This document shows, in pieces, positions 3,365 to 59,965 of a stretch of DNA of 61,089 bases. Source of the stretch: Ranitomeya imitator (lineage: Eukaryota); assembly GCF_032444005.1 (NCBI RefSeq), contig NC_091287.1, positions 24,366,001-24,427,089 of the forward strand, in the 5' to 3' direction. The stretch's first letter is position 1. Each line of letters opens with the position of its first letter. The notes under the pieces were generated by a model, which was not told the origin of the DNA, searched no databases, and saw nothing but the letters and a program-made list of their open reading frames with translations. The position numbers and the translations under genes were made by a program.

Positions 3365-3367
3365 TTG

Positions 3368-3386: not shown

Positions 3387-3406
3387 ACCGTGGCACAGGC
3401 GACAGC

Positions 3407-6400: not shown

Positions 6401-7708
6401 CATGTGAAGCCCTACCGGATTCCGGAAGCCCGCCGTGAAGCCGTCTCCCGGGAAGTGATGGCAATGTTGGACTTAGGAGTCATTGAAGAGTCGCACAGCG
6501 CCTGGTCCAGTCCAATTGTGTTGATACCTAAACCGGATAGCTCCATCCGGTTTTGTAATGACTTTAGGAAACTGAATGCAGTTTCTAAATTTGATGCGTA
6601 CCCTATGCCCCGGGTCGATGAGTTGATCGACCGGCTTGGTAAAGCCCGATACATTACGACCCTGGATTTAACAAAGGGGTACTGGCAGATTCCTCTGGCC
6701 GAGGCGGCCAGAGAGAAGACGGCATTTGCTACACCGGAAGGTCTGTTCCAGTATGTCTATATGCCGTTTGGACTTCACGGAGCTCCCGCAACGTTCCAGA
6801 GATTGATGGATCGAGTCTTGAGGCCTCACAGACAGTACGCTTCTGCCTACCTGGATGACATCGTAATTTACAGCATGGACTGGGAAACTCATCTCCAGAA
6901 GGTACAAGCCGTGATTGATGACCTGCGAGATGCAGGTTTAACGGCAAACCCCAAGAAATGCCACATCGGGCTTGAAGAAGCCCGATACTTGGGCTACGTG
7001 ATTGGCCGAGGAGTGGTTAAACCCCAGATCGACAAAATACAGGCAATTCAGGGCTGGCCACAACCAGTGAACAAGAAACAAGTGCAGGCTTTCCTGGGGA
7101 TTGCCGGCTATTATCGCCGGTTCATACCCAATTTTGCAGCCATGGCTACTCCCTTGACGGATCTTACCAAGGGGAAGGGTTCCGTCATGGTAAAATGGAC
7201 CTCAGCTGCTGAAGAGGCCTTCCACAGCCTGAAACGGGCTTTGTGCTCTCAGCCCGTACTAGTGACTCCTGATTTCAGCAGCGAGTTTGTGGTACAAACT
7301 GATGCCTCTGATACTGGTGTCGGAGCTGTACTTTCCCAGGTGAGGGACGGAGTCGAACACCCGGTCCTCTATCTCAGTCGGAAACTGAATGTACATGAGC
7401 AGAGGTATGCCGTGGTTGAAAAAGAGTGCCTAGCCATTAAATGGGCTCTCGACTCCCTCAAGTATTACCTGGCTGGTAGGAAGTTTAGGCTGGTCACAGA
7501 CCATGCCCCTCTCAAGTGGATGCACCTCCACAAGGACCGTAATAGTCGGGTAACCAGGTGGTTCCTTGCCCTGCAGGCTTACTCTTTTACGGTGGAGCAC
7601 CGACCTGGGGTGCAGATGGGGAACGCCGATGCCCTATCCCGAGTGCACTGTTTCAAAAGTGTTCTTGCTCGACCGGAGTGGTCTGAGCAAGGGGGGGGGG
7701 ATATGTAA
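3407..7708 (+). CDS. Gag-Pol polyprotein, 1433 aa from the first ATG (SCAN-like Gag, CCHC knuckle, aspartic protease, integrase, RT, RNase H)
   Basis: SCAN-like segment ~3870-4095 (…KKWLQPE…VVLDKYLRVLP…WV…QLVELVERY); CFRCHEKGHVSANC 4286-4327; LLDSG ~4478-4492; integrase H-H-C-C plus MDLVGP/TDQGTPF/GLVERFN and GPF motifs; RT LDLTKGYWQI and YLDD (6848-6859); RNase H TDASDTGVGAVL…DHAPL…NADALSR. The track start at 3326 is a non-ATG codon inside the LTR. Confidence 0.95.
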   Translation: MEDVVKALVQSTAVQQQATAAPHEANRLMAAQLKELLDMTVADRQLLQQVAQRLVSMPDADPEAESRRIHVSRYWQKLTAEDDVEAYLTTFERTALREKWPKARWADLIAPFLSGEAQKAYHDLDPEVAQDFEKLKAEILARLGVTTAVRAQRVHQWTYQQDKPARSQMFDLIYLTKKWLQPEVLTIPEIIQRVVLDKYLRVLPPALKRWVSQGNPTTADQLVELVERYSVAEGLPDDTANPRSVPPPRGTGKTVPGTTGEGKSLKTVGEESGTAHTPRPRVLDGGLSRGPVRCFRCHEKGHVSANCPVTAEPMQCDVIDSRKRMSLVTQLVSVNAGQNDTVKHLCELSVDGKNVVALLDSGSVVTLVKASLVALPSGPSDKFSVTCVHGDTRSYLTAVIWISTPYGSVQHKVGLVPALLHDVILGRDFPYFWQLWENQLLLHGSCTRESSPMPSGGPESLEETPQEDVAGEVSESNLQYPFSVMAGETEETEEPQREAEADSHPAPCLPDLGVQVDDFHSEQMKDPTLTPARKNVKMIDGVPVEPDTRLAYPYMVLENDLLYQVEKKGEDTVQRLVVPKPYRRKVLDLAHGHIMGGHLGVQKTTERILHCFVWPGIHCDVRNYCESCPECQIAAPKSQFRSPLVPLPIIGVPFERIGMDLVGPLPRSARGHQHILVIVDYATRYPEAVPLHSTATKTIAKELVQVFSRVGIPKQILTDQGTPFMSRVMKELCRLLQIDPLRTSVYHPQTDGLVERFNKTLKQMLRKAIDKDGKNWDYLLPYLLFAIREVPQSSTGFSPFELLYARRPRGLLDVAKETWEGQVTPFKTVIDHVTQMQDRIAAVMPIVRDHMLQAQGAQRQSYDRGAKVRTFAPGDRVLVLIPTVDSKFLAKWQGPFEVRERVGEVNYKVYQPGKRKPEQIYHVNLIKSWKDRSALTADLPRPVCSPTVPEVQVAETLSERQKSEVKQFLLQNRQFFSEKPGRTKLVKHEIVTEPGVTVHVKPYRIPEARREAVSREVMAMLDLGVIEESHSAWSSPIVLIPKPDSSIRFCNDFRKLNAVSKFDAYPMPRVDELIDRLGKARYITTLDLTKGYWQIPLAEAAREKTAFATPEGLFQYVYMPFGLHGAPATFQRLMDRVLRPHRQYASAYLDDIVIYSMDWETHLQKVQAVIDDLRDAGLTANPKKCHIGLEEARYLGYVIGRGVVKPQIDKIQAIQGWPQPVNKKQVQAFLGIAGYYRRFIPNFAAMATPLTDLTKGKGSVMVKWTSAAEEAFHSLKRALCSQPVLVTPDFSSEFVVQTDASDTGVGAVLSQVRDGVEHPVLYLSRKLNVHEQRYAVVEKECLAIKWALDSLKYYLAGRKFRLVTDHAPLKWMHLHKDRNSRVTRWFLALQAYSFTVEHRPGVQMGNADALSRVHCFKSVLARPEWSEQGGGDM
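7689..7700 (+). promoter_or_regulatory. Polypurine tract
   Basis: AAGGGGGGGGGG ends 3 nt before the 3' LTR. Confidence 0.9.
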
Positions 7709-8158: not shown

Positions 8159-10666
8159 ATGGATACACTGATATTGCTATATGGATACAATGTGATACTG
8201 CTATATGGATACACTGTGATACTGCTATATGGATACAATGTGATACTGCTATATGGATACAATGTGATACTGCTATATGGATACAGTGTGATACTGCTAT
8301 ATGGATACAATGTGATACTGCTATATGGATACAATGTGATACTGCTATATGGATACAATGTGATACTGCTATATGGATACAATGTGATACTGCTATATGG
8401 ATACAATGTGATACTGCTATATGGATACAATGTGATACTGCTATATGGATACAATGTGATACTGCTATATGGATACAATGTGATACTGCTATATGGATAC
8501 AATGTGATACTGCTATATGGATACAATGTGATACTACTATATGGATACAATGTGATACTGCTATATGGATACAATGTGATACTGCTATATGGATACAATG
8601 TGATACTGCTATATGGATACAATGTGATACTGCTATATGGATACAATGTGATACTGCTATATGGATACAATGTGATACTGCTATATGGATACAATGTTAT
8701 ACTGCTATATGGATACAATGTGATACTGCTATAAGATACAATGTGATACTACTATATGGATACAATGTGATACTGCTATATGGATACAATGTGATACTGC
8801 TATATGGATACACTGTGATACTGCTATATGGATACAATGTGATACTGCTATATGGATACAATGTGATACTGCTATATGGATACAATGTGATACTGCTATA
8901 AGATACAATGTGATACTGCTATATGGATACAATGTGATACTGCTATATGGATACAATGTGATACTGCTATATGGATACACTGTGATACTGCTATATGGAT
9001 ACAATGTGATACTGCTATATGGATACAATGTGATACTGCTATATGGATACAATGTGATACTGCTATAAGATACAATGTGATACTGCTATATGGATACACT
9101 GATATTTCTATATGGATACAATGTGATACTGCTATATGGATACACTGTGATACTGCTATATGGATACAATGTGATACTGCTATATGGATACAATGTGATA
9201 CTGCTATATGGATACAATGTGATACTCCTATATGGATACAATGTGATACTGCTATATGGATACACTGTGATACTGCTATATGGATACAGTGTGATACTGC
9301 TATATGGATACAGTGTGATACTGCTATATGGATACAATGTGATACTGCTATATGGATACAATGTGATACTCCTATATGGATACAATGTGATACTGCTATA
9401 TGGATACACTGTGATACTGCTATATGGATACAGTGTGATACTGCTATATGGATACACTGTGATACTGCTATATGGATACACTGTGATACTGCTATATGGA
9501 TACAATGTGATACTGCTATATGGATACAATGTGATACTGCTATATGGATACAATGTGATACTGCTATATGGATACAATGTGATACTGCTATATGGATACA
9601 ATGTGATACTGCTATATGGATACAATGTGATACTGCTATATGGATACACTGTGATACTGCTATATGGATACAATGTGATACTGCTATATGGATACAGTGT
9701 GATACTGCTATATAGATACAATGTGATACTGCTATATGGATACAATGTGATACTGCTATATGGATACACTGTGATACTGCTATATGGATACAATGTGATA
9801 CTGCTATATGGATGCACTGTGATACTGCTATATGGATACACTGTGATATTGCTATATGGATACAATGTGATACTGCTATATGGATACACTGTGATACTGC
9901 TATATGGATACAATGTGATACTGCTATATGGATACACTGTGATATTGCTATATGGATACAATGTTATACTGCTATATGGATACACTGTGATACTGCTATA
10001 TGGATACAATGTGATACTGCTATATGGATACAATGTGATACTGCTATATGGATACAATGTGATACTGCTATATGGATACACTGTGATACTGCTATATGGA
10101 TACAATGTGATACTGCTATATGGATACAATGTGATACTGCTATATGGATACAATGTGATACTGCTATATGGATACAATGTGATACTGCTATATGGATACA
10201 CTGTGATACTGCTATATGGATACAATGTGATACTGCTATATGGATACACTGTGATACTGCTATATGGATACAATGTGATACTGCTATATGGATACACTGT
10301 GATACTGCTATATGGATACACTGTGATACTGCTATATGGATACAATGTGATACTGCTTTATGGATACAATGTGATACTGCTATATGGATACAATGTGATA
10401 CTGCTATATGGATACAATGTGATACTGCTATATGGATACACTGTGATACTGCTTTATGGATACAATGTGATACTGCTATATGGATACACTGTGATACTGC
10501 TATATGGATACACTGTGATATTGCTATATGGATACAATGTGATACTGCTATATGGATACACTGTGATACTGCTTTATGGATACAATGTGATACTGCTATA
10601 TGGATACACTGTGATACTGCTATATGTAGACAATGTGATACTGTTGTATGGATACAATGGCATACT
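8159..10666. repeat. 24-bp satellite, right part
   Basis: Same unit resumes in register at the TSD, about 104 units; the CACTGTG variant is enriched toward the right end; the array decays at ~10625-10666. Confidence 0.98.
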
Positions 10667-10669
10667 GAG

Positions 10670-22885: not shown

Positions 22886-24850
22886 AGGGAACCTATTGAA
22901 AAATCTAATCTCCCCAACACCCCAAATCGTTACTATAACTGCATATCCTTTTAAATGATTAGGTTGTCAATCCTTTTACGACTTCTTTAGCAGAGAAAAA
23001 TCGTGCTTTGAAAATTCAGTCTTTAAGTGCATTGGGGCATGACTGTGCACTTACAGCTTCTCAGCCTCCTCTGTATTCCCTCATCTGTCCGAGATTACAT
23101 GTTCCGCGATGTTTGGAACAACCTCCTGCCGAGCTGCTACAAAAACTGTGGACGTTTACCTAAAAAAAAAAAATGTTGCTGTTTTGAAGGAGAAATATTG
23201 ATTTGATTTAGTCTTGAAGTGCATTGGGGCGTGATGATGCACTTACAGCTTCTCAGCCTCTGCTGTACTCCCCAACTAACGGCAGCACCCCTCCTCTGGC
23301 TGATTGACAGGTCAGTGCCCATTTACCAGAACAAATGATCTGACAATCAGCCAGGGAAAAGTGCTGCTAGGTCAGGAATACATTGGATACTAAGGAGCTG
23401 TAAGTGCATTGTCACGCCCCACTGCACTTTCAGACAGATCTTCAAAGCTTGATTTCTAGCTACTGGAGAGGTGCTTTGGGGGGAGGGGGAGGCTAACTGG
23501 TTTATATTTTTATAGGATTGCACAGACAATTTGGTGTGTTTTGGAGAGTTACAAGTTTTTGCTCTCTTCCCTTTAACATTTCTTAGTCAATCACTGGCTG
23601 GAGCAGGTCAGTGTTACTGATTAGCTAAAAGGAAATTTCGGGCAATTTTTGGGGTCGAGGGTGGGATCAAGAAGCAAAAAACCAGAGGGATTGAGTAAGC
23701 ACCAGAATTAGACCGGCATGTGGTCAGGGAGGTTGAGGATTTTGCTAGGTCAGGAATACACTGGATGCTAAGGAGCTGTAAGTGCATTTTCACGCCCCAC
23801 TGCACTTTCAGACAGATCTTCAAAGCTTGATTTCTAGCTACTGGAGAGGTGCTTTGGGGGGAGGGGGAGGCTAACTGGTATATATTTTTATAGGATTGCA
23901 CAGACAATTTGGTGTGTTTTGGAGAGTTACAAGTTTTTGCTCTCTTCCCTTTAACATTCTTAGTCAATCACTGGCTGGAGCAGGTCAGTGTTACTGATTA
24001 GCTAAAAGGAAATTTCGGGCAATTTTTGGGGTCGAGGGTGGGATCAAGAAGCAAAAAACCAGAGGGATTCAGTAAGCACCAGAATTAGACCGGCATGTGG
24101 TCAGGGAGGTTGAGGATTTTGCTAGGTCAGGAATACACCGGATGCTAAGGAGCTGTAAGTGCATCTTCACACCCCAATGCACTTCTAGGCTGCATGGCTC
24201 TGCTCTCAACATTAAGTAATCTCTGTCTGAAATTACATGTTCCAAGATGTCTGGAAAAGCATCCTGCCAAGCTCCTACAAAAACTGCGCACGTGTACCTT
24301 AAAAAATTGTTGCTGTTTTGAAGGAGAACTATTGATTTATTTAGTCTTGGGACGTGATGATGCACTTACAGCTTATAAGCCTCTGCTGTACTGCCCAACT
24401 AACAACAGCACCCCTCCTCTGGCTGATTGACAGGTCAGTAGCCATTTACTAGAAAAAACGATCTGTCAATCAACCATGGAAGGGTGCTGGTATGTCAGGG
24501 ATGCACCAGGTACTAAGGAGCTGTAAGTGCATTGTCACGCCCCACTGCACTTTCAGACTGATCTTCAAAGACTGATTTTTAGATACTGGGGGATTGACTG
24601 GTTTATATTTTTAAAGGGATACACAGGCGTATTAGTGTTTTTTGAGGTGTTAGAAGTAATTGATAATGTTCCTTTTAAAATTGTGCGCCAATCACTGGCA
24701 GGAGCGGGTCAGTATCAGTGATTAGCTAAGAGTAGAATTTCTCGGCATTTCTGGTGTCGAGGGTGGGATCAAGAAGTAAAAGACCAGAGGGATTGTGTAA
24801 GCACCAGAATCGGACCTGCATGCGGTCGGGGAGGTTGGGGATTTTCATAA
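22886..24850. mobile_element. T2-type MITE-derived composite with an internal 378-bp tandem duplication (units start at 23366, 23744 and 24121)
   Basis: Begins TTAA-AGGGAACCT; recurrent AAGTGCATTGGGGC…GCACTTACAGC units occur in both orientations; the right terminus is incomplete. Confidence 0.65.
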
Positions 24851-26083: not shown

Positions 26084-27006
26084 TAGTCATAGCACCATGC
26101 CTTCTTAAAACGCTGATTAACCTTAAAGAGTAACTAAACTTTTTTGTTTTTATATGTTGTAGCCAATGTTTAGTAGCTTTTCGTAGGTCTGATTTAAGCA
26201 CCAATGAATGGACAAAGGCAAAAGACGCTTAGCGTGTAGCAGAGCGGTGTACCGGCATTGTAGAATGTCTACAGGTTTGTTCATCCCTAGAGGATTAGTT
26301 GAGCACTTCTGCTCCTTCCTTTAAGCAATTGGTGTCTAAGTCCCTGAGCACAAGGTGAAAACTTTTATAAAATAGGAAATAAATTGGAAAGCAGTGTCAT
26401 TTTTTTATTGTATTTTTTAATAATTGGTCTTCTACCGAGACCCTATGCCACCCCAACTCTTCTCGTGTACCGTCCATAGTACAGTTACTGTATGGACCAA
26501 GCCATATTTAATCCTATTAGTAAAGAACGGGTCGGCAGATCTCAGACATCCATCATGAGCAAGACACATTATTTGTATTGCCATTCTCAGATGAGCCGAG
26601 AGTTGATGAACGCGATATTGATTCTGCTCTTCTGGTCTCCTGGATTTATGCGTTGGCACAAATTCAATCAAAATTTTCAAAGTGAAAAAAAAAATGGATC
26701 ATCACTTAGCGTAAAATCCGGACAAATCCTCCTATGACTAATAACACTCATCTCTATTTGGTGTCCAAGTTCACATTGGTTGTCAAAAGTAAACGATAGG
26801 GTACAACCATATTTACCATTTTAGGTCTATGCAAAACTTTGGTCACCTTGTCACCCAACCAGCGATCAATCTGTTCCACCTCTAGAGAATTTATCACATA
26901 TTCACTCCACCATGTCTTCAGTAACCTTCATGTTAGAGAGAAGACGCTCCTTGAAACTATGATGTTCAAATGCCAGAACAAATGATTAGGGCGCTAGGAT
27001 TAAAAA

Positions 27007-27091
27007 CGTGTAGTCTCGAAAGCTTGCAATTTGTGACCATCTTTTCAGTTAGCCATTAAAAGGTATCAACCACTGAGGACTCTCAATTCTA
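27007..27091 (+). mobile_element. 5'-truncated Penelope-like short retroposon (family B)
   Basis: 11-bp direct repeat AGGATTAAAAA (26996-27006 and 27092-27102); the body is near-identical to 43690-43772 and starts inside hammerhead stem II. Confidence 0.8.
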
Positions 27092-27123
27092 AGGATTAAA
27101 AAAGTAATATTCTTACTATTCAA

Positions 27124-36275: not shown

Positions 36276-36580
36276 GGCAAATAAGCCTCCTTACCTTGAC
36301 AAGCCAGAGATGGTATGTCACTCTCCATAAGGAGAAACGATACCCCTTAGACCCCAGTCCAGAGCCTCTCACCTAGCCAAATTAGTTCTCATGCTTCACA
36401 CTGACGAGGGCCAACAGCCTGAAACACCGTGTCTGCGAATTGAGATACTAATTTGGCTTTTATCCTAAGTCATATTGCATGACTCGTTAAAGAGTTGATT
36501 GTGACTTGTAGGATCGCTACTTCCAACAGGTGGCGCTATAGAGTTTAAGTCCTCTTTTTCTCAGAAGAGGCAATTTGCAT
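36276..36580 (+). mobile_element. Hammerhead-bearing retrozyme-like monomer (family A), diverged single copy
   Basis: Colinear, permuted homolog of the 293-bp unit at 37333-37625; possible 6-bp TSD ACTATC (36270-75 and 36581-86, weak). Confidence 0.8.
36395..36439 (+). ncRNA. Type I hammerhead ribozyme
   Basis: TTCACA-CTGACGA-GGGC(CAACA)GCCT-GAA-ACA(CCG)TGT-C|TGCGAA; intact core with GUC triplet and one stem I mismatch; extended stem AGCCAAATTAGT / ACTAATTTGGCT. Confidence 0.85.
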
Positions 36581-37170
36581 ACTATCTGCACAGTCATTTC
36601 AGTGGTTTATAGCTGCATGGCATAATGGTGAAGCCCGCGGGGCCATACCCAAGGTCATGTGAGCCTTCTCTAACTGATGCAATCTTTTGCGGAAAATGTT
36701 CAAATTTTCCAGGTTCAGCAAATTCCTAAAGATTCGACAGAGATTCAGTTGGCATCGAATCGATTTGCTCATCTCTAAATCTTTAACTTATTTGGCCCAT
36801 ATTCGATGTGATTCTGGCCTAAAAGATCCCTAATAACTTCCCTCTAAAAACATATCAACCTTTTATTCAAAGATCATTTCCTTAAAGACCTCAACAGCCA
36901 TCGGCAAGCCACAAATCCAATTTCATGGTATTATCTAGTGTGGTTTCTCTGCTAGGAAGTAATTTGCCTTTAATGGAACTGGTAGCGCTCCTCATTATAA
37001 TACATTGCTTATGGGAATTTTACCAAGTTAATATATTTAATATTCTGGAACTATGTAAAATGCCTGTAGCCTAAGAGGATATGGAATAGAGCATTGGTTG
37101 TATCTCCTAGAGTCAGTTTGTGTGCAAAAACAACAAGACTAAGGGACTCAAATATGGATTTTATAAAAAA

Positions 37171-37294
37171 ATAAAGATATATATCTTCGTACCGTGTTAG
37201 CCAGTAGATAGAAAAATATTTAGAATTGAGAGTCCTCAGTGGTTGATGAAGTCTAGTCTTTGCCTGATGAAGAGACCTGTGTAGACTTGAAAGC
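37171..37294. mobile_element. Penelope-like family B fragment: inverted 3' part (37171-37247) plus a direct hammerhead-bearing part (37248-37294)
   Basis: 37171-37247 contains the reverse complement of the family B 3' end (ATCAACCACTGAGGACTCTCAATTCTAAATATTTT); TTGC-CTGATGA-AGAGAC…GAAAGC at 37260-37294 has a damaged stem II. Confidence 0.75.
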
Positions 37295-37377
37295 ATGTCG
37301 AGGTGAGGAGACTTAAAGCCGCAATGCTCCTCATAGGTGGCACTAGAGTTCTAGTTCTCTTCCTCTCTGAAGAGACA

Positions 37378-37455
37378 ATTTGCATATTTCCCAGAGGAGC
37401 ATTGCGGCTTTAAGTCTCCTCACCTCGACATGCTTATCATGTCACTCTCTGCAAG
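37378..37455 (+). promoter_or_regulatory. snRNA-type promoter-like motifs: octamer (37378-85), SPH/ZNF143-like (37387-407), PSE-like (37444-55)
   Basis: ATTTGCAT is exact; TTTCCCAGAGGAGCATTGCGG resembles the Staf/SPH site; ACTCTC(T/C)(G/A)(C/T)AAG occurs in all three copies (36320, 37444, 37737) and resembles the Xenopus PSE as recalled. Confidence 0.55.
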
Positions 37456-37509
37456 GAGAAACGATACTTCTTGGATCCCGGTCAGTTGCCTCTCAATCAG
37501 CCAAATCAG

Positions 37510-37569
37510 ATCTCCACTTTGCACTGACGAGGGGCAGTACCCCGAAACACAGTGTCTGCAAATCGAGAT
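37510..37569 (+). ncRNA. Type I hammerhead ribozyme, fully canonical; predicted cleavage after 37556
   Basis: TTTGCA(37518-23)-CTGACGA-GGGG(CAGTA)CCCC-GAA-ACA(CAG)TGT-C|TGCAAA(37557-62); stem I is extended by ATCTC/GAGAT across a CAC/TC internal loop. Confidence 0.93.
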
Positions 37570-38163
37570 TCATGTGACAAGGCTCGTTAAAGGGTCGACA
37601 TTGACTGTTAGGATTGCTACTTCCAATAGGTGGCACTAGAGTTCTAGTTATCTTCCTCTCTGAAGAGACAATTTGCCTATTTCCCAGAGGAGCATTGCGG
37701 CTGTAAGTCTACTCACCTTAACATGCTTATCATGTCACTCTCCGCAAGGAGAAGCGATACTTCTTGGATCCCATATAAAAAAGTGAAAAACTGTAAATAT
37801 CTTACTGTTACTGAGAAAGCTAGGGGCAACCAATATGGCTGTCATTACACTTCCTATAGCTCTTTCCTGAACATATTGGCTTGACTACCTTGAGCCCACC
37901 AGAGAAGATGAAACTGGGGGAATTACCTTTACAAACTTTGCTTAACCTCATGGTTGATGTTGTGACTGATGCCCATTTTCATGTCCTGGACCCCTCTCTG
38001 ATGTCAAATGTTATGTGTAAAATAGTTATAGCTAATTATGTTTGATACATAACCAGTCCCCAATACTACAATAGAATAAGGATTCCTTTAAAGCTAGATG
38101 TCAGCCATTAGAGAGCTCTTCTGCCAGCCATGTTGATTGTCAACCAGCTTATATGAACTTATA

Positions 38164-39815
38164 CAGTTAGGGCCAGAAATATTTGGACAGTGACACAAGT
38201 TTTGTTATTTTAGCTGTTTACAAAAACATGTTCAGAAATACAATTATATATATAATATGGGCTGAAAGTGCACACTCCCAGCTGCAATATGATAGTTTCC
38301 ACATCCAAATCGGAGAAAGGGTTTAGGAATCATAGCTCTGTAATGCATAGCGTCCTCTTTTTCAAGGGACCAAAAGTAATTGGACAATGGACTCTAAGGG
38401 CTGCAATTAACTCTGAAAGTGTCTCCCTCGTTAACCTGTAATCAATGAAGTAGTTAAAAGGTCAGGGGTGGATTCCAGGTGTGTGGTTTTGCATTTGGAA
38501 GCTGTTGCTGTGAGCAGACAACATGCGGTCAAAGGAACTCTCAATTGAGGTGAAGCAGAACATCCTGAGGCTGAAAAAAAAGAAAAAATCCATCAGAGAG
38601 ATAGCAGACATGCTTGGAGTAGCAAAATCAACAGTTGGGTACATTCTGAGAAAAAAGGAATTGACTGGTGAGCTTGGGAACTCAAAAAGGCCTGGGCGTC
38701 CACGGATGACAAGAGTGGTGGATGATCGCCGCATACTTAATTTGGTGAAGAAGAACCCGTTCACAACATCAACTGAAGTCCAGAACACTCTCAGTGAAGT
38801 AGGTGTATCTGTCTCTAAGTCAACAGTAAAGAGAAGACTCCATGACAGTAAATACAAAGGGTTCACATCTAGATGCAAACCATTCATCAATACCAAAAAT
38901 AGACAGGCCAGAGTTAAATTTGCAGAAAAACACCTCAAGAAGCCAGCTCAGTTCTGGAAAAGTATTCTATGGACAGATGAGACAAAGATCAACCTGTACC
39001 AGAATGATGGGAAGAAAAAAGTTTGGAGAAGAAAGGGAACGGCACATGATCCAAGGCACACCACATCCTCTGTAAAACATGGTGGAGGCAACGTGATGGC
39101 ATGGGCATGCATGGCTTTCAATGGCACTGGGTCACTTGTGTTTATTGATGACATAAGAGCAGACAAGAGTAGCCGGATGAATTCTGAAGTGTACCGGGAT
39201 ATACTTTCAGCCCAGATTCAGCCAAATGCTGCAAAGTTGATTGGATGGCGCTTCATAGTACAGATGGACAATGACCCCAAGCATACAGCCAAAGCTACCC
39301 AGGAGTTCATGAGTGCCAAAAAGTGGAACATTCTGCAATGGCCAAGTCAATCTCCAGATCTAAACCCAATTGAGCATGCATTTCACTTGCTCAAATCCAG
39401 ACTTAAGACGGAAAGACCCACAAACAAGCAAGACCTGAAGGCTGCGGCTGTAAAGGCCTGGCAAAGCATTAAAAAGGACGAAACCCAGCGTTTGGTGATG
39501 TCCATGGGTTCCAGACTTAAGGCAGTGATTGCCTCCAAAGGATTTGCAACAAAATATTGAAAATAAAAATATTTTGTTTGGGTTATGTTTATTTGTCCAA
39601 TTACTTTTGACCTCCTAAAATGTGGAGTGTTTGTAAAGAAATGTGTACAATTCCTACATTTTCTATCAGATATTTTTGTTCAACCCTTCAAATTAAACGT
39701 TACAATCTGCACTTGAATTCTGTTGTAGAGGTTTCATTTCAAATCCAATGTGGTGGCATGCAGAGCCCAACTCGCGAAAATTGTGTCACTGTCCAAATAT
39801 TTCTGGCCCTAACTG
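38164..39815 (+). mobile_element. Full-length Tc1-like DNA transposon, 1652 bp
   Basis: TA TSD; perfect 35-bp TIR CAGTTAGGGCCAGAAATATTTGGACAGTGACACAA; inner inverted 17-mers at 38371-87 and 39593-609. Confidence 0.97.
38523..39560 (+). CDS. Intact Tc1 transposase, DD34E, 345 aa
   Basis: PAIRED-like HTH and GRPR motif; LWTDETK, QMDNDPKH and SPDLNPIEH, with 34 residues between the second D and the E. Confidence 0.95.
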   Translation: MRSKELSIEVKQNILRLKKKKKSIREIADMLGVAKSTVGYILRKKELTGELGNSKRPGRPRMTRVVDDRRILNLVKKNPFTTSTEVQNTLSEVGVSVSKSTVKRRLHDSKYKGFTSRCKPFINTKNRQARVKFAEKHLKKPAQFWKSILWTDETKINLYQNDGKKKVWRRKGTAHDPRHTTSSVKHGGGNVMAWACMAFNGTGSLVFIDDIRADKSSRMNSEVYRDILSAQIQPNAAKLIGWRFIVQMDNDPKHTAKATQEFMSAKKWNILQWPSQSPDLNPIEHAFHLLKSRLKTERPTNKQDLKAAAVKAWQSIKKDETQRLVMSMGSRLKAVIASKGFATKY

Positions 39816-40064
39816 TATATACCCAGGTTGTCCATCCATGAAAACATTAAAAAAATGCTAAGAGTTTTATAGCAGAAGTCATACTCACCACGGCACCAAT
39901 TCTAAGGCTTCCTGGTCTCTCGACAGTCTCTGTAGTTCCATCCAGTAAATGTTTTGTCTTCTACACTTACTATTAATGCAGCTTATTACCGGCTAAGCAG
40001 TGACCCACTGTAGCCAGTGATTGTCTGCAGCAGTAAAGAGCTGAAGTGAAATGCCGAGATCGGT

Positions 40065-43492: not shown

Positions 43493-43606
43493 TCCACCTG
43501 CAGTGGAGTGTGCAATCTTCCAATGTCCTTGAAATCGGCTGGGCAAGGAGTTCAACAAGCTGGAAAGCCCCCAAGGCAAATGTTAGGATTTGTTTGTGAT
43601 GTCTGT

Positions 43607-43778
43607 GATTTTTTTTTTCTGTGCTATGTTGTGTATTAATATGTGATTCTTCAGAATTTCTTTTAGTCTTTACCTGATGAAGAGACCTGAGTAGTCTCGA
43701 AAGCTTGCAATTCGTTACCATCTTTTCAGTTAGCCATTTAAAGGTATCAACCACTGAGGACTCTCAATTCTAAATATT
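43607..43778 (+). mobile_element. Penelope-like short retroposon (family B), 172 bp
   Basis: 14-bp TSD TTTGTGATGTCTGT (43593-606 and 43779-92); contains a minimal hammerhead. Confidence 0.82.
43670..43710 (+). ncRNA. Minimal type I hammerhead (palindromic helix III, probably active only as a dimer)
   Basis: TTAC-CTGATGA-A-GAGAC(CTGAGTA)GTCTC-GAA-AGCT-T-GCAA; the 37260 copy has TTGC, which restores stem I. Confidence 0.65.
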
Positions 43779-45356
43779 TTTGTGATGTCTGTAAGCTGCT
43801 TTGTGGTAGTGTGGTGCCACCTGCAGGTCATTTTTCCTTACTGCAGGTTTATGAAAATTAATTTTTTAAGTGTATTTTGTGATCACATCGTGGATGTGTG
43901 GTTTATTTGGCTATTTTCTTGCTAAAGGGGGCAAGTTTACCTTTCAAATGGTGTATCATTTGTGTGTGTGGGTGCAGTATGAACGTAGATACAAAATAAT
44001 CACCAAAAAAGTGTTTAGAAATAATATAAAAGGATTAACGATAAAAAAAAAAAAAAAAATTACAATTAAAAAATAGTATTTTTTTAAATAATGCCCAATA
44101 ATAATAAAATAATATAATGCAAAAATAATGATTGATAGCAAAAACAACAATAATAATTTAGAATAATAAATAAAATGCATGATATATTATTACCTTAATG
44201 GAGAACACATGTAACATTCCTATAAGTTATCTATCACGGTATTAGAAAATCACCGCCGGCAGCCGGGGTAGACAGTGAGTGATAATGACACATGACCATT
44301 TGATGAACAGTACTTTGCAGAGAAAATATTTTTCAGGATAAATGGTCTATAATCTAAAATTATTCTCAGCAGCATAATGGGAAACTTTGCATTTATGGAG
44401 AGCAGAGCCTCCCAGACAGTGTAAAGCAGTAGATCAGACGAGGAGGACACATTAGCCTGTAAGTACATTGTGCACAGCTTAGCCGGCCGAGATCTGGTCT
44501 TAGTGATATATGTTCCTTCCTCTTGTAAATGGAATATTTAGTGATGGTAAGAAAAGCACCCATCTGCTGCATGTATAATGCTTCTCTACTCTGCAAATGT
44601 CAATTCATGCTTCAAGGGTTATTAGATACCAAACTCCGATTATGGTGGAATACATGCAGAGATTGAGGATGCTTAAAAAAAAATCAGACCTTTACTTTGA
44701 TGTTTGGGATAAATCTTCAAGTAATAAAAAAAAAATAGAACAAATGAAAGATAAATAAAAATGAGCAAAAAAATAAAAAATAACCCATTCCTTCAAATAT
44801 GGTGGAGTATGCGGGCAATAAATGTTAGATCTGTGAAATAAGAATGAAAAAAAAAATAAATAAAAAGAAAGTTGAAACAAAGGATAAAATATAAACAAAG
44901 ATAAAGTGAGAGCTGGCTTCATATTTTTGAATGGGACATAAAGAAATGGAATGTTGAGCTGAATGTCTGCTATGTTTGGCTTGCGATTATTTCACTTCCT
45001 GAGACCTCTGAACCCAATAGTGAAGCTGTTGTCTATGATGAAACCATTTTTATTAGATAAATGCACATAATTAACATGTAAACATCTTTGCCAACTTTCT
45101 CAGAACATCTGGGAGGCTCCGAGAAAAGAAAAGACCAGATAAAGATCTCACATAGTTGGCAAATATCTCACAGACAAAAGTATTTTTCCGGTTTTCTGTA
45201 TGCGATATTGGGATGCGTGGAATGGGCTTTCCTAGGGTCACGACATGAAAAAAATGGCATGGAGACCAGTAAAAATTTGCCACCCTCTGAATTTCCCTTG
45301 ACGGCCAAGATTGTATATTTTTCATTAACAGGTCTCTTTGTACTACTGCTACTTAT

Positions 45357-53060: not shown

Positions 53061-56000
53061 TCTATAATATAACGCTGGGAGCGTCACTCTGTCCGAAGCC
53101 TCTATAGACTGCGCAAGCGCCGGCGCAGTCTGAGCCTCACAGAGCGACGCTCCCGGGAGATCGCGGTGTGCGTTCACACTGAACGCACACCGCGATCTCC
53201 ACCGCAGAAGCAGGGACCGCCAGGAGGGTGAGTATCTGCCTATAGTCACCTGTCCCCGTTACATCGCTGAGCGGCGCCATCTTCCCGGTCTTCGGCCTGT
53301 GACCTTCAGTTCAGAGGGCGCCGCCCTCTGACTGAACAGTCACAGCCAGGAGACCGGGAAGATGGCGGCGCTCAGCGATGGAACGCCGGACAGGTGAGTA
53401 TAGTAAGTGCTGGGGGGCCTGAGCTGGCGGCGATACCGGCACCTGACCCCCACAGCGCGCCGGTGTCCCCGCCTGCTCAGGCCCCCCAGCACTCGGCGCC
53501 GAGCGGGTCAGAGGCAGTATGGGGAAGCAGGATGGAGCAGCACATAAGGATGGGGACGCAGGATGGAGCAGCACATAAGGATGGGGACGCAGGATGGAGC
53601 AGCACATAAGGATGGGGACGCAGGATGGAGCAGCACATAAGGATGGGGACGCAGGATGGAGCAGCACATAAGGATGGGGACGCAGGATGGAGCAGCACAT
53701 AAGGATGGGGACGCAGGATGGAGCAGCACATAAGGATGGGGACGCAGGATGGAGCAGCACATAAGGATGGGGACGCAGGATGGAGCAGCACATAAGGATG
53801 GGGACGCAGGATGGAGCAGCACATAAGGATGGGGACGCAGGATGGAGCAGCACATAAGGATGGGGACGCAGGATGGAGCAGCACATAAGGATGGGGAAGC
53901 AGGATGGAGCAGGACATAAGGATGGGGAAGCAGGATGGAGCAGGACATAAGGATGGGGACGCAGGAAGGAGCAGCACATAAGGATGGGGACGCAGGAAGG
54001 AGCAGCACATAAGGATGGGGACGCAGGATGGAGCAGCACATAAGGATGGGGAAGCAGGATGGAGCAGCACATAAGGATGGGGACGCAGGATGGAGCAGCA
54101 CATAACAGTATGGGGACGCAGGATGGAGCAGCACATAACAGTATGGGGACGCAGGATGGAGCAGCACATAAGGATGGGGACGCAGGATGGAGCAGCACAT
54201 AAGGATGGGGACGCAGGATGGAGCAGCACATAACAGTATGGGGACGCAGGATGGAGCAGCACATAAGGATGGGGACGCAGGATGGAGCAGGACATAAGGA
54301 TGGGGACGCAGGATGGAGCAGCACATAAGGATGGGGACGCAGGATGGAGCAGCACATAAGGATGGGGACGCAGGATGCAGCAGCACATAAGGATGGTGAC
54401 GCAGGATGCAGCAGCACATAAGGATGGGGACGCAGGATGGAGCAGCACATAACAGTATGGGGACGCAGGATGGAGCAGCACATAAGGATGGGGACGCAGG
54501 ATGGAGCAGCACATAAGGATGGGGACGCAGGATGGAGCAGCACATAAGGATGGGGACGCAGGATGGAGCAGCACATAAGGATGGGGACGCAGGATGGAGC
54601 AGCACATAAGGATGGGGACGCAGGATGGAGCAGCACATAAGGATGGGGACGCAGGATGGAGCAGCACATAAGGATGGGGACGCAGGATGGAGCAGCACAT
54701 AAGGATGGGGACGCAGGATGGAGCAGCACATAAGGATGGGGACGCAGGATGGAGCAGCACATAAGGATGGGGACGCAGGATGGAGCAGCACATAAGGATG
54801 GGGACGCAGGATGGGAGCAGCACATAAGGATGGGGACGCAGGATGGAGCAGCACATAAGGATGGGGACGCAGGATGGAGCAGCACATAAGGATGGGGACG
54901 CAGGATGCAGCATGAACATAAGGATGGGGACGCAGGATGCAGCAGCACATAAGGATGGGGACGCAGGATGGAGCAGCACATAACAGGATGGGGACGCAGG
55001 ATGGAGCAGCACATAAGGATGGGGACGCAGGATGGAGCAGCACATAACAGGATGGGGACGCAGGATGGAGCAGCACATAAGGATGGGGACGCAGGATGGA
55101 GCAGCACATAAGGATGGGGACGCAGGATGGAGCAGCACATAAGGATGGGGACGCAGGATGGAGCAGCACATAAGGATGGGGACGCAGGATGGGAGCAGCA
55201 CATAAGGATGGGGATGCAGGATGGAGCAGCACATAGGGATGGGGACGCAGGATGGAGCAGCACATAACAGGATGGGGACGCAGGATGGAGCAGCACATAA
55301 GGATGGGGACGCAGGATGGAGCAGCACATAAGGATGGGGACGCAGGATGGAGCAGCACATAAGGATGGGGACGCAGGATGGAGCAGCACATAACAGGATG
55401 GGGACGCAGGATGGAGCAGCACATAAGGATGGGGACGCAGGATGGGAGCAGCACATAAGGATGGGGACGCAGGATGGAGCAGCACATAACAAGATGGGGA
55501 CGCAGGATGGAGCAGCACATAAGGATGGGGACGCAGGATGGGAGCAGCACATAAGGATGGGGACGCAGGATGGAGCAGCACATAAGGATGGGGACGCAGG
55601 ATGGAGCAGCACATAAGGATGGGGACGCAAGATGCAGCATGAACATAAGGATGGGGACGCAGGATGCAGCATGAACATAAGGATGGGGACGCAGGATGCA
55701 GCATGAACATAAGGATGGGGACGCAGGATGCAGCAGCACATAAGGATGGGGACGCAGGATGCAGCATGAACATAAGGATGGGGACGCAGGATGGGAGCAG
55801 CACATAAGGATGGGGACGCAGGATGCAGCAGCACATAAGGATGGGGACGCAGGATGCAGCATGAACATAAGGATGGGGACGCAGGATGCAGCATGAACAT
55901 AAGGATGGGGACGCAGGATGCAGCATGAACATAAGGATGGGGACGCAGGATGCAGCAGCACATAAGGATGGGGACGCAGGATGCAGCATGAACATAAGGA

Positions 56001-59000
56001 TGGGGACGCAGGATGGGAGCAGCACATAAGGATGGGGACGCAGGATGCAGCAGTACATAAGGATGGGGACGCAGGATGCAGCATGAACATAAGGATGGGG
56101 ACGCAGGATGCAGCATGAACATAAGGATGGGGACGCAGGATGCAGCATGAACATAAGGATGGGGACGCAGGATGGGAGCAGCACATAAGGATGGGGACGC
56201 AGGATGCAGCAGCACATAAGGATGGGGACGCAGGATGGAGCAGCACATAAGGATGGGGACGCAGGATGGAGCAGCACATAAGAATGGGGATGCAGCATGA
56301 ACATAAGGATGGGGACGCAGGATGCAGCATGAACATAAGGATGGGGACGCAAGATGCAGCATGAACATAAGGATGGGGACGCAGGATGCAGCAGCACATA
56401 AGGATGGGGACGCAGGATGCAGCAGTACATAAGGATGGGGACGCAGGATGCAACAGCACATAAGGATGGGGACGCAGGATCGAGCAGCACATAAGGATGG
56501 GGACGCAGGATGCAGCAGCACATAAGGATGGGGACGCAGGATGCAGCAGCACATAAGGATGGGGACGCAGGATGCAGCATGAACATAAGGATGGGGACGC
56601 AGGATGCAGCAGCACATAAGGATGGGGACGCAGGATGCAGCAGCACATAAGGATGGGGACGCAGGATGGAGCAGCACATAAGGATGGGGACGCAGGATGC
56701 AGCAGCACATAAGGATGGGGACGCAGGATGGAGCAGCACATAACAGGATGGGGACGCAGGATGGAGCAGCACATAACAGGATGGGGACGCAGGATGGAGC
56801 ATGAACATAAGGATGGGGACGCAGGATGCAGCAGCACATAAGGATGGGGACGCAGGATGCAGCAGCACATAAGGATGGGGACGCAGGATGGAGCAGCACA
56901 TAAGGATGGGGACGCAGGATGGGAGCAGCACATAAGGATGGGGACGCAGGATGGAGCAGCACATAAGGATGGGGACGCAGGATGCAGCAGCACATAAGGA
57001 TGGGGACGCAGGATGGAGCAGCACATAAGGATGGGGACGCAGGATGGGAGCAGCACATAAGGATGGGGACGCAGGATGGAGCAGCACATAAGGATGGGGA
57101 CGCAGGATGCAGCAGCACATAAGGATGGGGACGCAGGATGCAGCAGCACATAAGGATGGGGACGCAGGATGGAGCAGCGCATGACAGGATGGGGACGCAT
57201 GATGGAGCAGCGCATGACAGGATGGGGACGCAGGATGCAGCAGCACATGACAGGATGGGGACGCAGGATGGGAGCAGCGCATCACAGGATGGGAGCAGCG
57301 CATCACAGGATGGGGACGCAGGATGGGAGCAGCGCATAAGAATGGGCATGCAGCATGAACATAAGGATGGGGACGCAGGATGCAGCATGAACATAAGGAT
57401 GGGGACGCAAGATGCAGCATGAACATAAGGATGGGGACGCAGGATGCAGCAGCACATAAGGATGGGGACGCAGGATGCAGCAGTACATAAGGATGGGGAC
57501 GCAGGATGGAGCAGCACATAAGAATGGGGATGCAGCATGAACATAAGGATGGGGACGCAGGATGCAGCATGAACATAAGGATGGGGACGCAAGATGCAGC
57601 ATGAACATAAGGATGGGGACGCAGGATGCAGCAGCACATAAGGATGGGGACGCAGGATGCAGCAGTACATAAGGATGGGGACGCAGGATGCAGCAGCACA
57701 TAAGGATGGGGACGCAGGATCGAGCAGCACATAAGGATGGGGACGCAGGATGCAGCAGCACATAAGGATGGGGACGCAGGATGCAGCAGCACATAAGGAT
57801 GGGGACGCAGGATGCAGCATGAACATAAGGATGGGGACGCAGGATGCAGCAGCACATAAGGATGGGGACGCAGGATGCAGCAGTACATAAGGATGGGGAC
57901 GCAGGATGGAGCAGCACATAAGGATGGGGACGCAGGATGCAGCAGCACATAAGGATGGGGACGCAGGATGGAGCAGCACATAACAGGATGGGGACGCAGG
58001 ATGGAGCAGCACATAACAGGATGGGGACGCAGGATGGAGCATGAACATAAGGATGGGGACGCAGGATGCAGCAGCACATAAGGATGGGGACGCAGGATGC
58101 AGCAGCACATAAGGATGGGGACGCAGGATGGAGCAGCACATAAGGATGGGGACGCAGGATGGGAGCAGCACATAAGGATGGGGACGCAGGATGGAGCAGC
58201 ACATAAGGATGGGGACGCAGGATGCAGCAGCACATAAGGATGAGGACGCAGGATGGAGCAGCACATAAGGATGGGGACGCAGGATGGGAGCAGCACATAA
58301 GGATGGGGACGCAGGATGTAGCAGCACATAAGGATGGGGACGCAGGATGCAGCAGCACATAAGGATGGGGACGCAGGATGCAGCAGCACATAAGGATGGG
58401 GACGCATGATGGAGCAGCGCATGACAGGATGGGGACGCAGGATGCAGCAGCACATGACAGGATGGGGACGCAGGATGGGAGCAGCGCATCACAGGATGGG
58501 AGCAGCGCATCACAGGATGGGGACGCAGGATGGGAGCAGCGCATAAGAATGGGCATGCAGCATGAACATAAGGATGGGGACGCAGGATGCAGCATGAACA
58601 TAAGGATGGGGACGCAAGATGCAGCATGAACATAAGGATGGGGACGCAGGATGCAGCAGCACATAAGGATGGGGACGCAGGATGCAGCAGTACATAAGGA
58701 TGGGGACGCAGGATGGAGCAGCACATAAGAATGGGGATGCAGCATGAACATAAGGATGGGGACGCAGGATGCAGCATGAACATAAGGATGGGGACGCAAG
58801 ATGCAGCATGAACATAAGGATGGGGACGCAGGATGCAGCAGCACATAAGGATGGGGACGCAGGATGCAGCAGTACATAAGGATGGGGACGCAGGATGCAG
58901 CAGCACATAAGGATGGGGACGCAGGATCGAGCAGCACATAAGGATGGGGACGCAGGATGCAGCAGCACATAAGGATGGGGACGCAGGATGCAGCAGCACA

Positions 59001-59965
59001 TAAGGATGGGGACGCAGGATGCAGCATGAACATAAGGATGGGGACGCAGGATGCAGCAGCACATAAGGATGGGGACGCAGGATGCAGCAGTACATAAGGA
59101 TGGGGACGCAGGATGGAGCAGCACATAAGGATGGGGACGCAGGATGCAGCAGCACATAAGGATGGGGACGCAGGATGGAGCAGCACATAACAGGATGGGG
59201 ACGCAGGATGGAGCAGCACATAACAGGATGGGGACGCAGGATGGAGCATGAACATAAGGATGGGGACGCAGGATGCAGCAGCACATAAGGATGGGGACGC
59301 AGGATGCAGCAGCACATAAGGATGGGGACGCAGGATGGAGCAGCACATAAGGATGGGGACGCAGGATGGGAGCAGCACATAAGGATGGGGACGCAGGATG
59401 GAGCAGCACATAAGGATGGGGACGCAGGATGCAGCAGCACATAAGGATGAGGACGCAGGATGGAGCAGCACATAAGGATGGGGACGCAGGATGGGAGCAG
59501 CACATAAGGATGGGGACGCAGGATGTAGCAGCACATAAGGATGGGGACGCAGGATGCAGCAGCACATAAGGATGGGGACGCAGGATGCAGCAGCACATAA
59601 GGATGGGGACGCATGATGGAGCAGCGCATGACAGGATGGGGACGCAGGATGCAGCAGCACATGACAGGATGGGGACGCAGGATGGGAGCAGCGCATCACA
59701 GGATGGGGACGCAGGATGGGAGCAGCACATGACAGGATGGGGACGCAGGATGGGAGCAGCACATGACAGGATGGGGACGCAGGATGGGAGCAGCACATGA
59801 CAGGATGGGGACGCAGGATGGAGCAGCACATGACAGGATGGGGACGCAGGATGGAGCAGCGCATGACAGGATGGGGACGCAGGATGGAGCAGCACATACC
59901 AGGATGGAGACAATATACCAATATAAATGCTCGCCACCCGGGCGTAGAACGGGTTCAATAGCTAG
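53061..59965 (+). mobile_element. Non-autonomous Helitron, 6905 bp
   Basis: A|TC at 53060|53061, CTAG|T at 59962-65|59966, and a hairpin ACCCG…CGGGT 6 nt before the CTAG; a host repeat (GTGCGGTAGTATTG…CAGTATTATGTGT) occurs on both sides. Confidence 0.87.
53515..59909. repeat. 31-bp minisatellite (GGATGGGGACGCAGGATGGAGCAGCACATAA)n, ~200 units, inside the Helitron
   Basis: 31-bp period with 32- and 33-bp variants; ~1.2-kb higher-order repeats in the distal half. Confidence 0.98.

What the first reader, a model, noticed from the sequence alone, without database searches (positions are those of the whole stretch)
37291..37773. Satellite-2/retrozyme-like 293-bp tandem element with a canonical hammerhead ribozyme in a probable frog genome
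Seen: a 293-bp unit is present 1.5 times. It contains TTTGCA-CUGACGA-GGGG(CAGUA)CCCC-GAA-ACA(CAG)UGU-C|UGCAAA, with every conserved core base, three paired stems, a GUC triplet, and an extended stem I with an internal loop placed to contact loop II. There is no ORF. Established: non-coding tandem repeats of a few hundred bp with one type I hammerhead per unit are retrozymes (newt satellite 2, Schistosoma SMalpha); they produce monomeric and circular RNAs and are thought to be mobilised by other elements' RT. Inference: this is an anuran retrozyme family, possibly uncharacterised in this lineage, that would yield ~293-nt linear or circular RNAs from dimeric loci.
Basis: partly seen in the sequence, partly recalled or inferred. 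Interest (0 to 1): 0.85.

Follow-up and report, generated by a model that had tools for sequence, protein, structure and literature searches.

The report
Dead frog hammerhead retrozyme copy
This is a real but worn-out insertion of a small protein-free mobile repeat that carries a self-cutting hammerhead RNA motif. Such elements (non-LTR retrozymes) are already described in salamanders and frogs, so it is a sound example rather than a discovery.

Summary
A 147-nt segment recurs with a 293-nt period (37333-37479 and 37626-37772, 95% identical). It brackets one complete type I hammerhead at 37518-37562, with the cut predicted after C37556. A strict hammerhead descriptor finds this one site in the window and a hit in only 6 of 1000 shuffled windows. 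Rfam Hammerhead_1 aligns over its full length at 25.5 bits, below its gathering score of 34.

A second copy, about 77% identical, lies at 36283-36581. Its own hammerhead keeps all 12 core bases and shows two compensatory pair changes.

The leftmost 42 nt of the reported span are a perfect inverted copy of 37394-37435, not a direct repeat. A partial tandem with an inverted 5' piece is the published signature of Penelope-like retroelement insertions. The tandem period equals the short unit, and neither end lies at the cleavage site. This implies a circular or multimeric RNA template.

Each locus has one hammerhead, so neither can release unit-length RNA. Helix III is weak and a dimeric ("double hammerhead") fold is favoured, as in salamander elements.

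Anuran retrozymes are already published (57 Xenopus families). This scan has also noted many hammerhead retrozymes elsewhere in this genome. Verdict: new member of a known kind, low interest.

The parts
37291..37332 (-). 42-nt inverted 5' arm. It is a perfect reverse-complement copy of 37394-37435 and abuts the start of the direct copy.
   Evidence: the repeat finder I1 shows 100% complementarity with 61 nt between the arms. The hairpin folds at -100 kcal/mol, z -16.
37333..37479 (+). Repeat arm A, the first half-unit. It contains the octamer ATTTGCAT at 37378-37385.
   Evidence: Direct repeat D1; octamer search.
37480..37625 (+). Single-copy half of the unit. It carries the hammerhead.
   Evidence: It lies between the two arms of D1.
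37518..37562 (+). Type I hammerhead ribozyme motif. The predicted cut is after C17 at 37556.
   Evidence: Rfam RF00163 full-length match, 25.5 bits. Strict descriptor hit, found in 6 of 1000 shuffles.
37509..37570 (+). Hammerhead with its extended helix I: 37509-14 pairs with 37565-70, beyond an internal loop of CAC/UC.
   Evidence: Centroid fold.
37626..37772 (+). Repeat arm A', the second copy of A, with 8 differences. The insertion ends at 37772.
   Evidence: D1 at 95% identity; list of differences.
36283..36581 (+). Older copy of about one unit from the same family. It is circularly permuted relative to the 1.5-mer. It carries 23 extra nt (36447-36469) that complete a 10-bp distal helix I.
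   Evidence: blastn. Alignment A1 gives 77% identity excluding gaps. Fold z -5.0 for the extended hammerhead.
36395..36439 (+). Hammerhead of the older copy, cut predicted after C36433. The core is intact, with two compensatory pair changes, one G-U and one A.C mismatch.
   Evidence: Rfam RF00163 at 21.6 bits; pair counts.

Best explanation
Both loci are old, non-coding insertions of one family of non-LTR retrozymes. These are short mobile repeats whose RNA carries a type I hammerhead.

In source loci with two or more units, the transcript would cut itself at each hammerhead. This probably happens through a dimeric 'double hammerhead', because helix III is only 3 bp with a 3-nt loop. The unit-length RNA would then be circularised by a host ligase. 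It would be copied back into DNA by the reverse transcriptase of an autonomous element, most likely a Penelope-like element.

The copy at 37291-37772 was laid down as a 1.5-unit partial tandem with a short inverted piece at its 5' end. The copy at 36283-36581 is about one unit. Each has one hammerhead, so each is a dead-end product that can at most cut a host read-through transcript once.

What is shown here:
- the motif
- the repeat architecture
- the second copy
- the pattern of substitutions
- the predicted fold energies

What is inferred:
- transcription
- cleavage
- circularisation
- the identity of the mobilising enzyme
For: Motif: the hammerhead is complete and rare by chance. A covariance model built from the two copies finds no other hammerhead in the window.

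Family: a second copy lies 1.1 kb away on the same strand at 77% identity. It has 9 of 45 hammerhead positions changed but none of the 12 core bases (P about 0.04). There are compensatory changes in helix I (U-A to C-G) and helix II (G-C to C-G).

Retrozyme rather than any other repeat:
- The unit is 293 nt with head-to-tail repetition.
- GC is 47% for the unit and 45% for the solo copy.
- There is no ORF and no tRNA-like part.
These match the definition in Cervera and de la Pena 2020 (PMC7229834).

Template: the insertion is longer than one unit. Its ends lie 224 nt before and 216 nt after the cut site. The two copies end at different phases of the unit. This fits a circular or multimeric RNA with internal initiation, not a cleaved linear monomer or a fixed 3' end.

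Mobilising enzyme: a partial tandem with an inverted piece at the 5' end is the published signature of Penelope-like insertions (PMC8557442). Their enzyme initiates internally and extends both DNA strands (PMC11167929). Xenopus retrozymes are related to Penelope pLTRs.

Dimer: the canonical single fold is -7.8 kcal/mol against -13.6 for a competing fold that sequesters C3-G5. The domain-swapped double hammerhead is -26.8, against -15.6 for two single folds. Dimer dependence is documented for newt and axolotl hammerheads.
Against: - Only two copies could be examined, so covariation rests on two sequences. Shuffles reach the observed value in 129 of 500 trials.
- The hammerhead as a whole is no better conserved than the rest of the unit (80% against 77%).
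- Both Rfam scores are below the gathering score.
- No convincing target-site duplication was found for either copy.
- The circular fold of the 293-nt unit is no more stable than shuffles (z -0.7 to -1.9), whereas retrozyme circles are described as highly self-paired.
- The inverted arm does not end at the same phase as the direct copy's 3' end, so it is not the textbook 'inverted 5'-truncated copy'.
- No Penelope-like RT or GIY-YIG ORF was seen among ORFs of 110 aa or more in the window.
- No expression or cleavage data exist.
Confidence: 0.8

Rival explanations
1. The copies are 5'-truncated insertions of an autonomous Penelope-like element. They would consist only of its hammerhead-bearing pseudo-LTR, not of a separate non-autonomous retrozyme family.
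For: Penelope-like elements carry type I hammerheads in their pLTRs. They are heavily 5'-truncated and form tandem and inverted structures. Xenopus retrozyme families are sister to pLTRs.
Against: The tandem period is 293 nt, which is the whole short unit and not a multi-kb element. The two copies end at different phases of the unit rather than at one fixed 3' end. No RT or GIY-YIG ORF was detected in the window.
Confidence: 0.1
2. The unit is a SINE-like retroposon mobilised by a LINE (CR1, L2 or L1). On this reading the hammerhead acts as in Schistosoma SM-alpha, and the inverted arm comes from twin priming.
For: An A-rich stretch follows the 3' end at 37773-37790. 5' inversions occur in LINE-mediated insertions (established knowledge).
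Against: There is no tRNA-like or pol III-type head. The two copies do not share a 3' end. The 1.5-unit tandem is not expected from a linear SINE transcript. The inverted arm duplicates sequence also present in the direct copy, unlike classical twin priming.
Confidence: 0.05
3. The hammerhead-like sequence is a chance motif inside an ordinary local duplication and has never been a ribozyme.
For: Rfam scores are below the gathering score. The minimum-energy fold is not the hammerhead.
Against: The strict descriptor hits 6 of 1000 shuffles. A second homologous copy keeps all core bases at 23% divergence and shows two compensatory pairs. The same genome is reported to be rich in such elements (unchecked notes).
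Confidence: 0.02
4. A host-exapted ribozyme that processes a host transcript, in the manner of the amniote HH9/HH10 intronic hammerheads.
For: Both hammerheads are on the same strand, 1.1 kb apart. If co-transcribed they would excise a defined RNA.
Against: There is no Rfam match to HH9 or HH10. No host gene was recognised in the window. The surroundings are transposons and satellites. The two copies have diverged at the rate of the neutral-looking rest of the unit.
Confidence: 0.03

Closest known systems
Non-LTR retrozymes of animals (Cervera and de la Pena 2020, PMC7229834). Anuran examples are in Li, Clavereau and Pollet 2026 (bioRxiv 10.64898/2026.07.22.740005).
   Same: It has a type I hammerhead and a non-coding unit within the 150-450 bp range. 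The unit is repeated head to tail, GC is below 50%, and there is no LTR, PBS or PPT. More than one copy is present. The size is close to the amphibian average of 316 bp.
   Different: This locus has only 1.5 units and one hammerhead, so it counts as a monomer-class relic, not an 'active' retrozyme. The predicted circle of the 293-nt unit is not unusually self-paired. No clear target-site duplication was found. RNA was not examined.
Newt and salamander satellite 2, and axolotl Rtz331/Rtz353
   Same: It is an amphibian element with a unit of about 300-350 nt and a type I hammerhead with a weak helix III. A dimeric hammerhead is predicted to be favoured. An octamer motif lies inside the unit, as in the snRNA-type promoter reported for newt satellite 2 (Coats et al. 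1994, cited in PMC2220036).
   Different: Helix III here is 3 bp with a 3-nt loop (a 9-nt near-palindrome), not 1-2 bp capped by a tetraloop. Sequence homology to satellite 2 was not tested because no sequence was available to the tools. A promoter is not demonstrated.
Pseudo-LTRs of Penelope-like elements
   Same: They also carry a hammerhead, and their insertions also show a partial tandem with an inverted piece at the 5' end.
   Different: No RT/GIY-YIG ORF is present, and the tandem period equals a 293-nt unit. This hammerhead is canonical, with a closed helix III, whereas the hammerheads reported for Penelope-like elements are described as minimal variants.
Schistosoma SM-alpha
   Same: It is a short non-coding repeat with one type I hammerhead that has an extended helix I and an internal loop.
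   Different: SM-alpha is a SINE-like element with a pol III promoter (as stated in PMC2220036). No tRNA-like part is found here.

Membership tests
Hammerhead ribozyme, type I | Core CUGANGA ... GAA, the A15.1-U16.1 pair, H17, and three helices with helix I open | tested here: met
   Both copies satisfy it. Helix lengths are I=6, II=4, III=3 in the main copy.
Rfam Hammerhead_1 (RF00163) | Score at or above the gathering threshold of 34 bits | tested here: not met
   Scores are 25.5 and 21.6 bits, as full-length alignments 1-45. There is no hit at gathering on the whole window.
Hammerhead ribozyme | Mg2+-dependent self-cleavage after position 17 | not testable with these tools
   This needs in vitro transcription of monomeric and dimeric constructs.
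Non-LTR retrozyme | Non-coding unit of about 150-450 bp repeated head to tail, one type I hammerhead per unit | tested here: met
   Period 293, 1.5 units. No ORF above 86 aa.
Non-LTR retrozyme ('active' in the sense of Li et al. 2026) | [quoted passage not shown] | tested here: not met
   Each locus has one hammerhead. The criterion is quoted.
Non-LTR retrozyme | GC below 50%, and no LTR, PBS or PPT | tested here: met
   GC is 47% and 45%. The only repeats are the 147-nt tandem arms and the 42-nt inverted arm.
Non-LTR retrozyme | Target-site duplication longer than 4 bp, when present | tested here: inconclusive
   Only weak candidates exist. One is CATAC(AC)TATC around the solo copy. The other is ATAGAAAA/ATATAAAA around 37207-37772. 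Both were read.
Non-LTR retrozyme | Unit RNA predicted to be highly self-paired as a circle | tested here: inconclusive
   The main unit gives z -0.7 to -1.9. The solo copy gives z -4.4.
Non-LTR retrozyme | Abundant linear and circular unit-length RNAs | not testable with these tools
   No transcriptome access.
Non-LTR retrozyme | Dispersed multi-copy family in the genome | tested here: inconclusive
   There are two copies in this window. The rest of the genome is not searchable. Two metagenome scans found nothing.
Penelope-like element (pLTR) | Contiguity with, or a tandem period of, an RT plus GIY-YIG element | tested here: not met
   The period is 293 nt. Pfam scans of ORFs of 110 aa or more show only a Ty3/Gypsy pol and a Tc1 transposase.
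Newt satellite 2 | Internal snRNA-type promoter (octamer/DSE plus PSE) | tested here: inconclusive
   The octamer ATTTGCAT sits at homologous positions in both copies (37378, 36573). However, octamers are common in the window: 10 found against 6.4 expected. No PSE model was available.

The most novel reading that the evidence does not exclude
The stretch 37207-37772 could be one chimeric insertion made from two different small RNAs, the ~172-nt 'Y' retroposon and the hammerhead unit. The two DNA ends would have been primed separately and joined by template switches, one of them a snap-back on the nascent cDNA. That would make it a fossil of the both-strand priming and internal initiation seen in vitro for a Penelope-like enzyme. 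In addition, the unit may carry its own octamer-based snRNA-type promoter, as newt satellite 2 does. That would imply a shared retrozyme design across frogs and salamanders.
Probability: 0.12. Interest if true: 0.45.

Novelty: new member of a known kind. Interest (0 to 1): 0.17.

Why it matters
It adds one more family, with a unit of 293 to about 316 nt, to the catalogue of amphibian hammerhead retrozymes. It also gives a small worked example of how such elements are laid down: longer than one unit, ends away from the cleavage site, and an inverted 5' piece. This is consistent with a circular or multimeric RNA template and a Penelope-type enzyme. It does not open a new question. The kind, its presence in frogs and its link to Penelope-like elements are all published, and this particular locus is inactive.

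Tried and rejected
- Rfam at gathering thresholds on the whole window gave nothing. An E-value search on 651 nt listed only generic miRNA-hairpin hits to the 42-bp inverted repeat. The hammerhead appeared only when about 90 nt were searched.
- TRF does not call the repeat.
- Two scans of metagenome contigs with degenerate patterns of this hammerhead found no further copies.
- A full-text search for the hammerhead's sequence strings found only unrelated papers.
- The primers published for Xenopus retrozymes were looked over by eye only. They showed no obvious match to this unit, and no search was run.
- An exact look-up of the neighbouring Tc1 transposase, meant to name the organism, found nothing. 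The organism was therefore not verified here. Earlier notes of this scan call it a poison frog.
- The Coats et al. 1994 paper on the newt promoter is not held.
- The CTGATGA...GAAAGC motif at 37264 and 43674 was considered as a second, minimal hammerhead. Rfam gives no hit, helix III cannot close in a monomer, and helix I is poor, so it is not claimed.
- The competing fold that pairs GCACUG with CAGUGU was considered as a conserved off-switch. The one relevant substitution in the older copy breaks a pair without compensation, so there is no support.

Full report
**The observation**

The repeat finder gives one direct-repeat family, 37333-37479 and 37626-37772. It is 147 nt long, 95% identical, with a spacing of 293, and blastn confirms it. 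Together with the 146 nt between the arms, this makes 440 nt, or 1.5 units. TRF reports nothing there, as expected for fewer than two copies.

The hammerhead lies in the single-copy half:
- helix I 5' strand UUUGCA, 37518-23
- CUGACGA, 37524-30
- helix II GGGG/CCCC with loop CAGUA, 37531-43
- GAA, 37544-46
- helix III ACA/UGU with loop CAG, 37547-55
- C17 at 37556
- helix I 3' strand UGCAAA, 37557-62

Beyond a CAC/UC internal loop, helix I continues as GAUCUC (37509-14) paired with GAGAUU (37565-70).

**Whether the motif could be chance**

I wrote a descriptor that requires all core bases, the A15.1-U16.1 pair, a non-G at position 17, and helices of at least 5, 3 and 3 pairs. It finds this one site on either strand of the window. 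It gives any hit in 6 of 1000 dinucleotide-preserving shuffles.

Rfam gives no hit at gathering thresholds. It gives none in a 651-nt E-value search either, because of its filters. On a 91-nt stretch, Hammerhead_1 (RF00163) aligns over all 45 model positions at 25.5 bits (E 1e-4 for that stretch), below the gathering score of 34. The motif is therefore canonical in architecture but is not a close relative of the Rfam seed sequences.

**A second copy**

blastn of the unit against the window finds a diverged copy at about 36283-36581 on the same strand. Alignment gives 77% identity excluding gaps and 69% including them. This copy is about one unit long and is circularly permuted relative to the 1.5-mer. 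It runs from the phase of 37411 to the phase of about 37388.

It has its own hammerhead at 36395-36439 (RF00163, 21.6 bits), with the cut predicted after C36433. Nine of the 45 hammerhead positions differ between the copies. None of the nine is among the 12 invariant core positions (P about 0.04).

The changes in the helices are:
- pair 2.4/1.4 changes from U-A to C-G
- the fourth pair of helix II changes from G-C to C-G
- the first pair of helix II becomes G-U
- one helix I pair becomes A.C

With two sequences this is suggestive only, and the tool's own shuffle control is unimpressive (129 of 500). The hammerhead as a whole is also no better conserved than the rest of the unit (80% against 77%). 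A covariance model built from the two hammerheads finds no third one in the window.

**The unit may be a deletion derivative**

The older copy has 23 nt (36447-36469) that the 293-nt unit lacks. These nucleotides pair with 36377-36386 and extend helix I by 10 bp. As a result, the extended hammerhead of the older copy folds far better than shuffles (z -5.0), while that of the main copy does not (z -0.4). With these 23 nt the unit would be about 316 nt. Earlier unchecked notes of this scan mention families of 314-316 nt elsewhere in this genome. I could not compare the sequences.

**The left end**

The first 42 nt of the reported span (37291-37332) are not a direct repeat. They are a 100% reverse-complement copy of 37394-37435 and abut the start of the direct copy. 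If transcribed, this stretch would form a 42-45 bp perfect hairpin (-100 kcal/mol, z -16). That hairpin explains the spurious miRNA-family hits.

A perfect match over 42 nt bounds post-event divergence only loosely, at below about 7%. The two direct arms differ at 8 positions. Polarised by eye against the older copy, 5-6 changes are derived in A' and one in A. The arms may therefore already have differed in the template, although the asymmetry is not significant (P 0.125 for the 6:1 split, the most asymmetric reading).

**How the copy was made**

The direct part is longer than one unit. It starts 224 nt before the cut site and ends 216 nt after it. The two copies in the window end at different phases of the unit. 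This excludes reverse transcription from the 3' end of a self-cleaved linear monomer, and it excludes a fixed 3' terminus. It fits a circular or uncleaved multimeric RNA with internal initiation.

The published literature agrees on three points:
- Cervera and de la Pena propose rolling reverse transcription of retrozyme circles and name Penelope-like elements as the likely helpers (PMC7229834).
- Craig et al. describe Penelope-like insertions as 5'-truncated partial tandems, often with an inverted 5'-truncated copy next to the 5' end and a 30-40 bp tail (PMC8557442).
- Frangieh et al. show that such an enzyme cleaves and extends both strands and initiates internally (PMC11167929).

The fit is not perfect. 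The inverted arm does not end at the same phase as the direct copy's 3' end. No convincing target-site duplication was found.

**How the ribozyme would work**

As a lone 45-mer, the canonical hammerhead fold has -7.8 kcal/mol. A competing fold has -13.6 and pairs GCACUG (including C3-G5) with CAGUGU. The helix III segment ACACAGUGU is a near-palindrome. A domain-swapped double hammerhead with an 8-bp helix III evaluates at -26.8 kcal/mol, against -15.6 for two single hammerheads.

This is the behaviour documented for newt and axolotl hammerheads, which cleave poorly alone and well as dimers (citing Forster et al. 1988). It implies that only loci with two or more units would process efficiently. 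Neither locus here qualifies. By the criterion of Li et al., at least two consecutive complete hammerheads, both are inactive monomer-class derivatives.

**Other features of the unit**

There is no ORF above 86 aa and no tRNA-like part. GC is 47% for the unit and 45% for the solo copy. The circularised 293-nt unit does not fold better than shuffles (z -0.7 to -1.9), while the older copy does (z -4.4).

The octamer ATTTGCAT sits at homologous positions in both copies (37378 and 36573) and is mutated in arm A'. Octamers are common in the window, with 10 found against 6.4 expected. Newt satellite 2 is reported to have an snRNA-type promoter (Coats et al. 1994, as cited in PMC2220036). A sibling note of this scan proposes the same for this unit. 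I could not test it beyond the octamer.

**Surroundings**

The window is a transposon- and satellite-rich region. It contains:
- a Ty3/Gypsy pol ORF inside a 24-bp satellite
- a Tc1 element with 43-nt terminal inverted repeats at 38160-39819, about 390 bp downstream of the insertion
- several other satellites

No host gene and no Penelope-like ORF were recognised.

Immediately left of the insertion lie two fragments of another short retroposon, which I call Y. Elsewhere in the window Y has clear 14-nt target-site duplications. The order and orientation of these pieces at 37207-37333 is unexplained (note).

**What is already known**

- Non-LTR retrozymes were defined in 2020, with amphibian examples (PMC7229834).
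- A 2026 preprint finds them in all seven amphibians sampled and reports 57 families in Xenopus. It also reports monomers spread over the chromosomes, relatedness to Penelope pLTRs, and in vitro cleavage for only one of nine tested dimers.
- This scan's own notes list many hammerhead retrozyme insertions elsewhere in this genome. These are unchecked by me.

The sequence of this family was not found in the text searches available to me. Repbase and Dfam could not be consulted.

**Verdict**

The retrozyme reading is supported for the family. This locus is a dead copy. It is a new member of a known kind, of low interest.

Noticed in passing
43607-43778 (+); 27010-27091 (+); fragments 37212-37247 (-) and 37254-~37295 (+): A short (~172 nt) non-coding retroposon, called 'Y' here. 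One copy is flanked by a perfect 14-nt target duplication, TTTGTGATGTCTGT (43593-43606 and 43779-43792). A 5'-truncated copy is flanked by AGGATTAAAAA[C/A]GT (26996-27009 and 27092-27105). It contains a hammerhead-like string (CTGATGA A GAGAC...GTCTC GAA AGCT). Rfam does not recognise this string, and it could only be a 'minimal' dimer-dependent variant.
   Followed up: partly
37207-37333: The Y fragments and the retrozyme pieces alternate in orientation: Y tail inverted, Y middle direct, unit arm inverted, unit direct. A 4-nt overlap, AAGC, lies at the Y/unit joint. This could be nested insertions with a deletion or one chimeric event.
   Followed up: partly
38160-39819: A Tc1/mariner element with an intact-looking 345-aa transposase ORF (38523-39560; HTH_Tnp_Tc3_2 and DDE_3). 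Its terminal inverted repeats are 43 nt long and 98% identical.
   Followed up: partly
1-2912 and 8169-10667, with 3326-7708 between: A 24-bp satellite (over 220 copies, 95% matches) is split by a Ty3/Gypsy-type element. The element's 1460-aa ORF has a SCAN domain and, unusually, integrase domains upstream of RT and RNase H.
   Followed up: no
53519-59911: A 31-bp purine-rich satellite, about 204 copies, open in several reading frames on the minus strand. The long 'ORFs' there are artefacts of the repeat.
   Followed up: no
23365-24184: A 377-bp tandem repeat, 2.2 copies, 97% identical. No hammerhead was found by the descriptor or the covariance model. Its nature is unknown.
   Followed up: no
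37441-37470 and 36315-36345: The block ATGTCACTCTC...AAGGAGAAACGATAC is among the best conserved parts of the unit outside the hammerhead (80-87% in 15-nt windows). It might be a promoter element, but this is untested.
   Followed up: no
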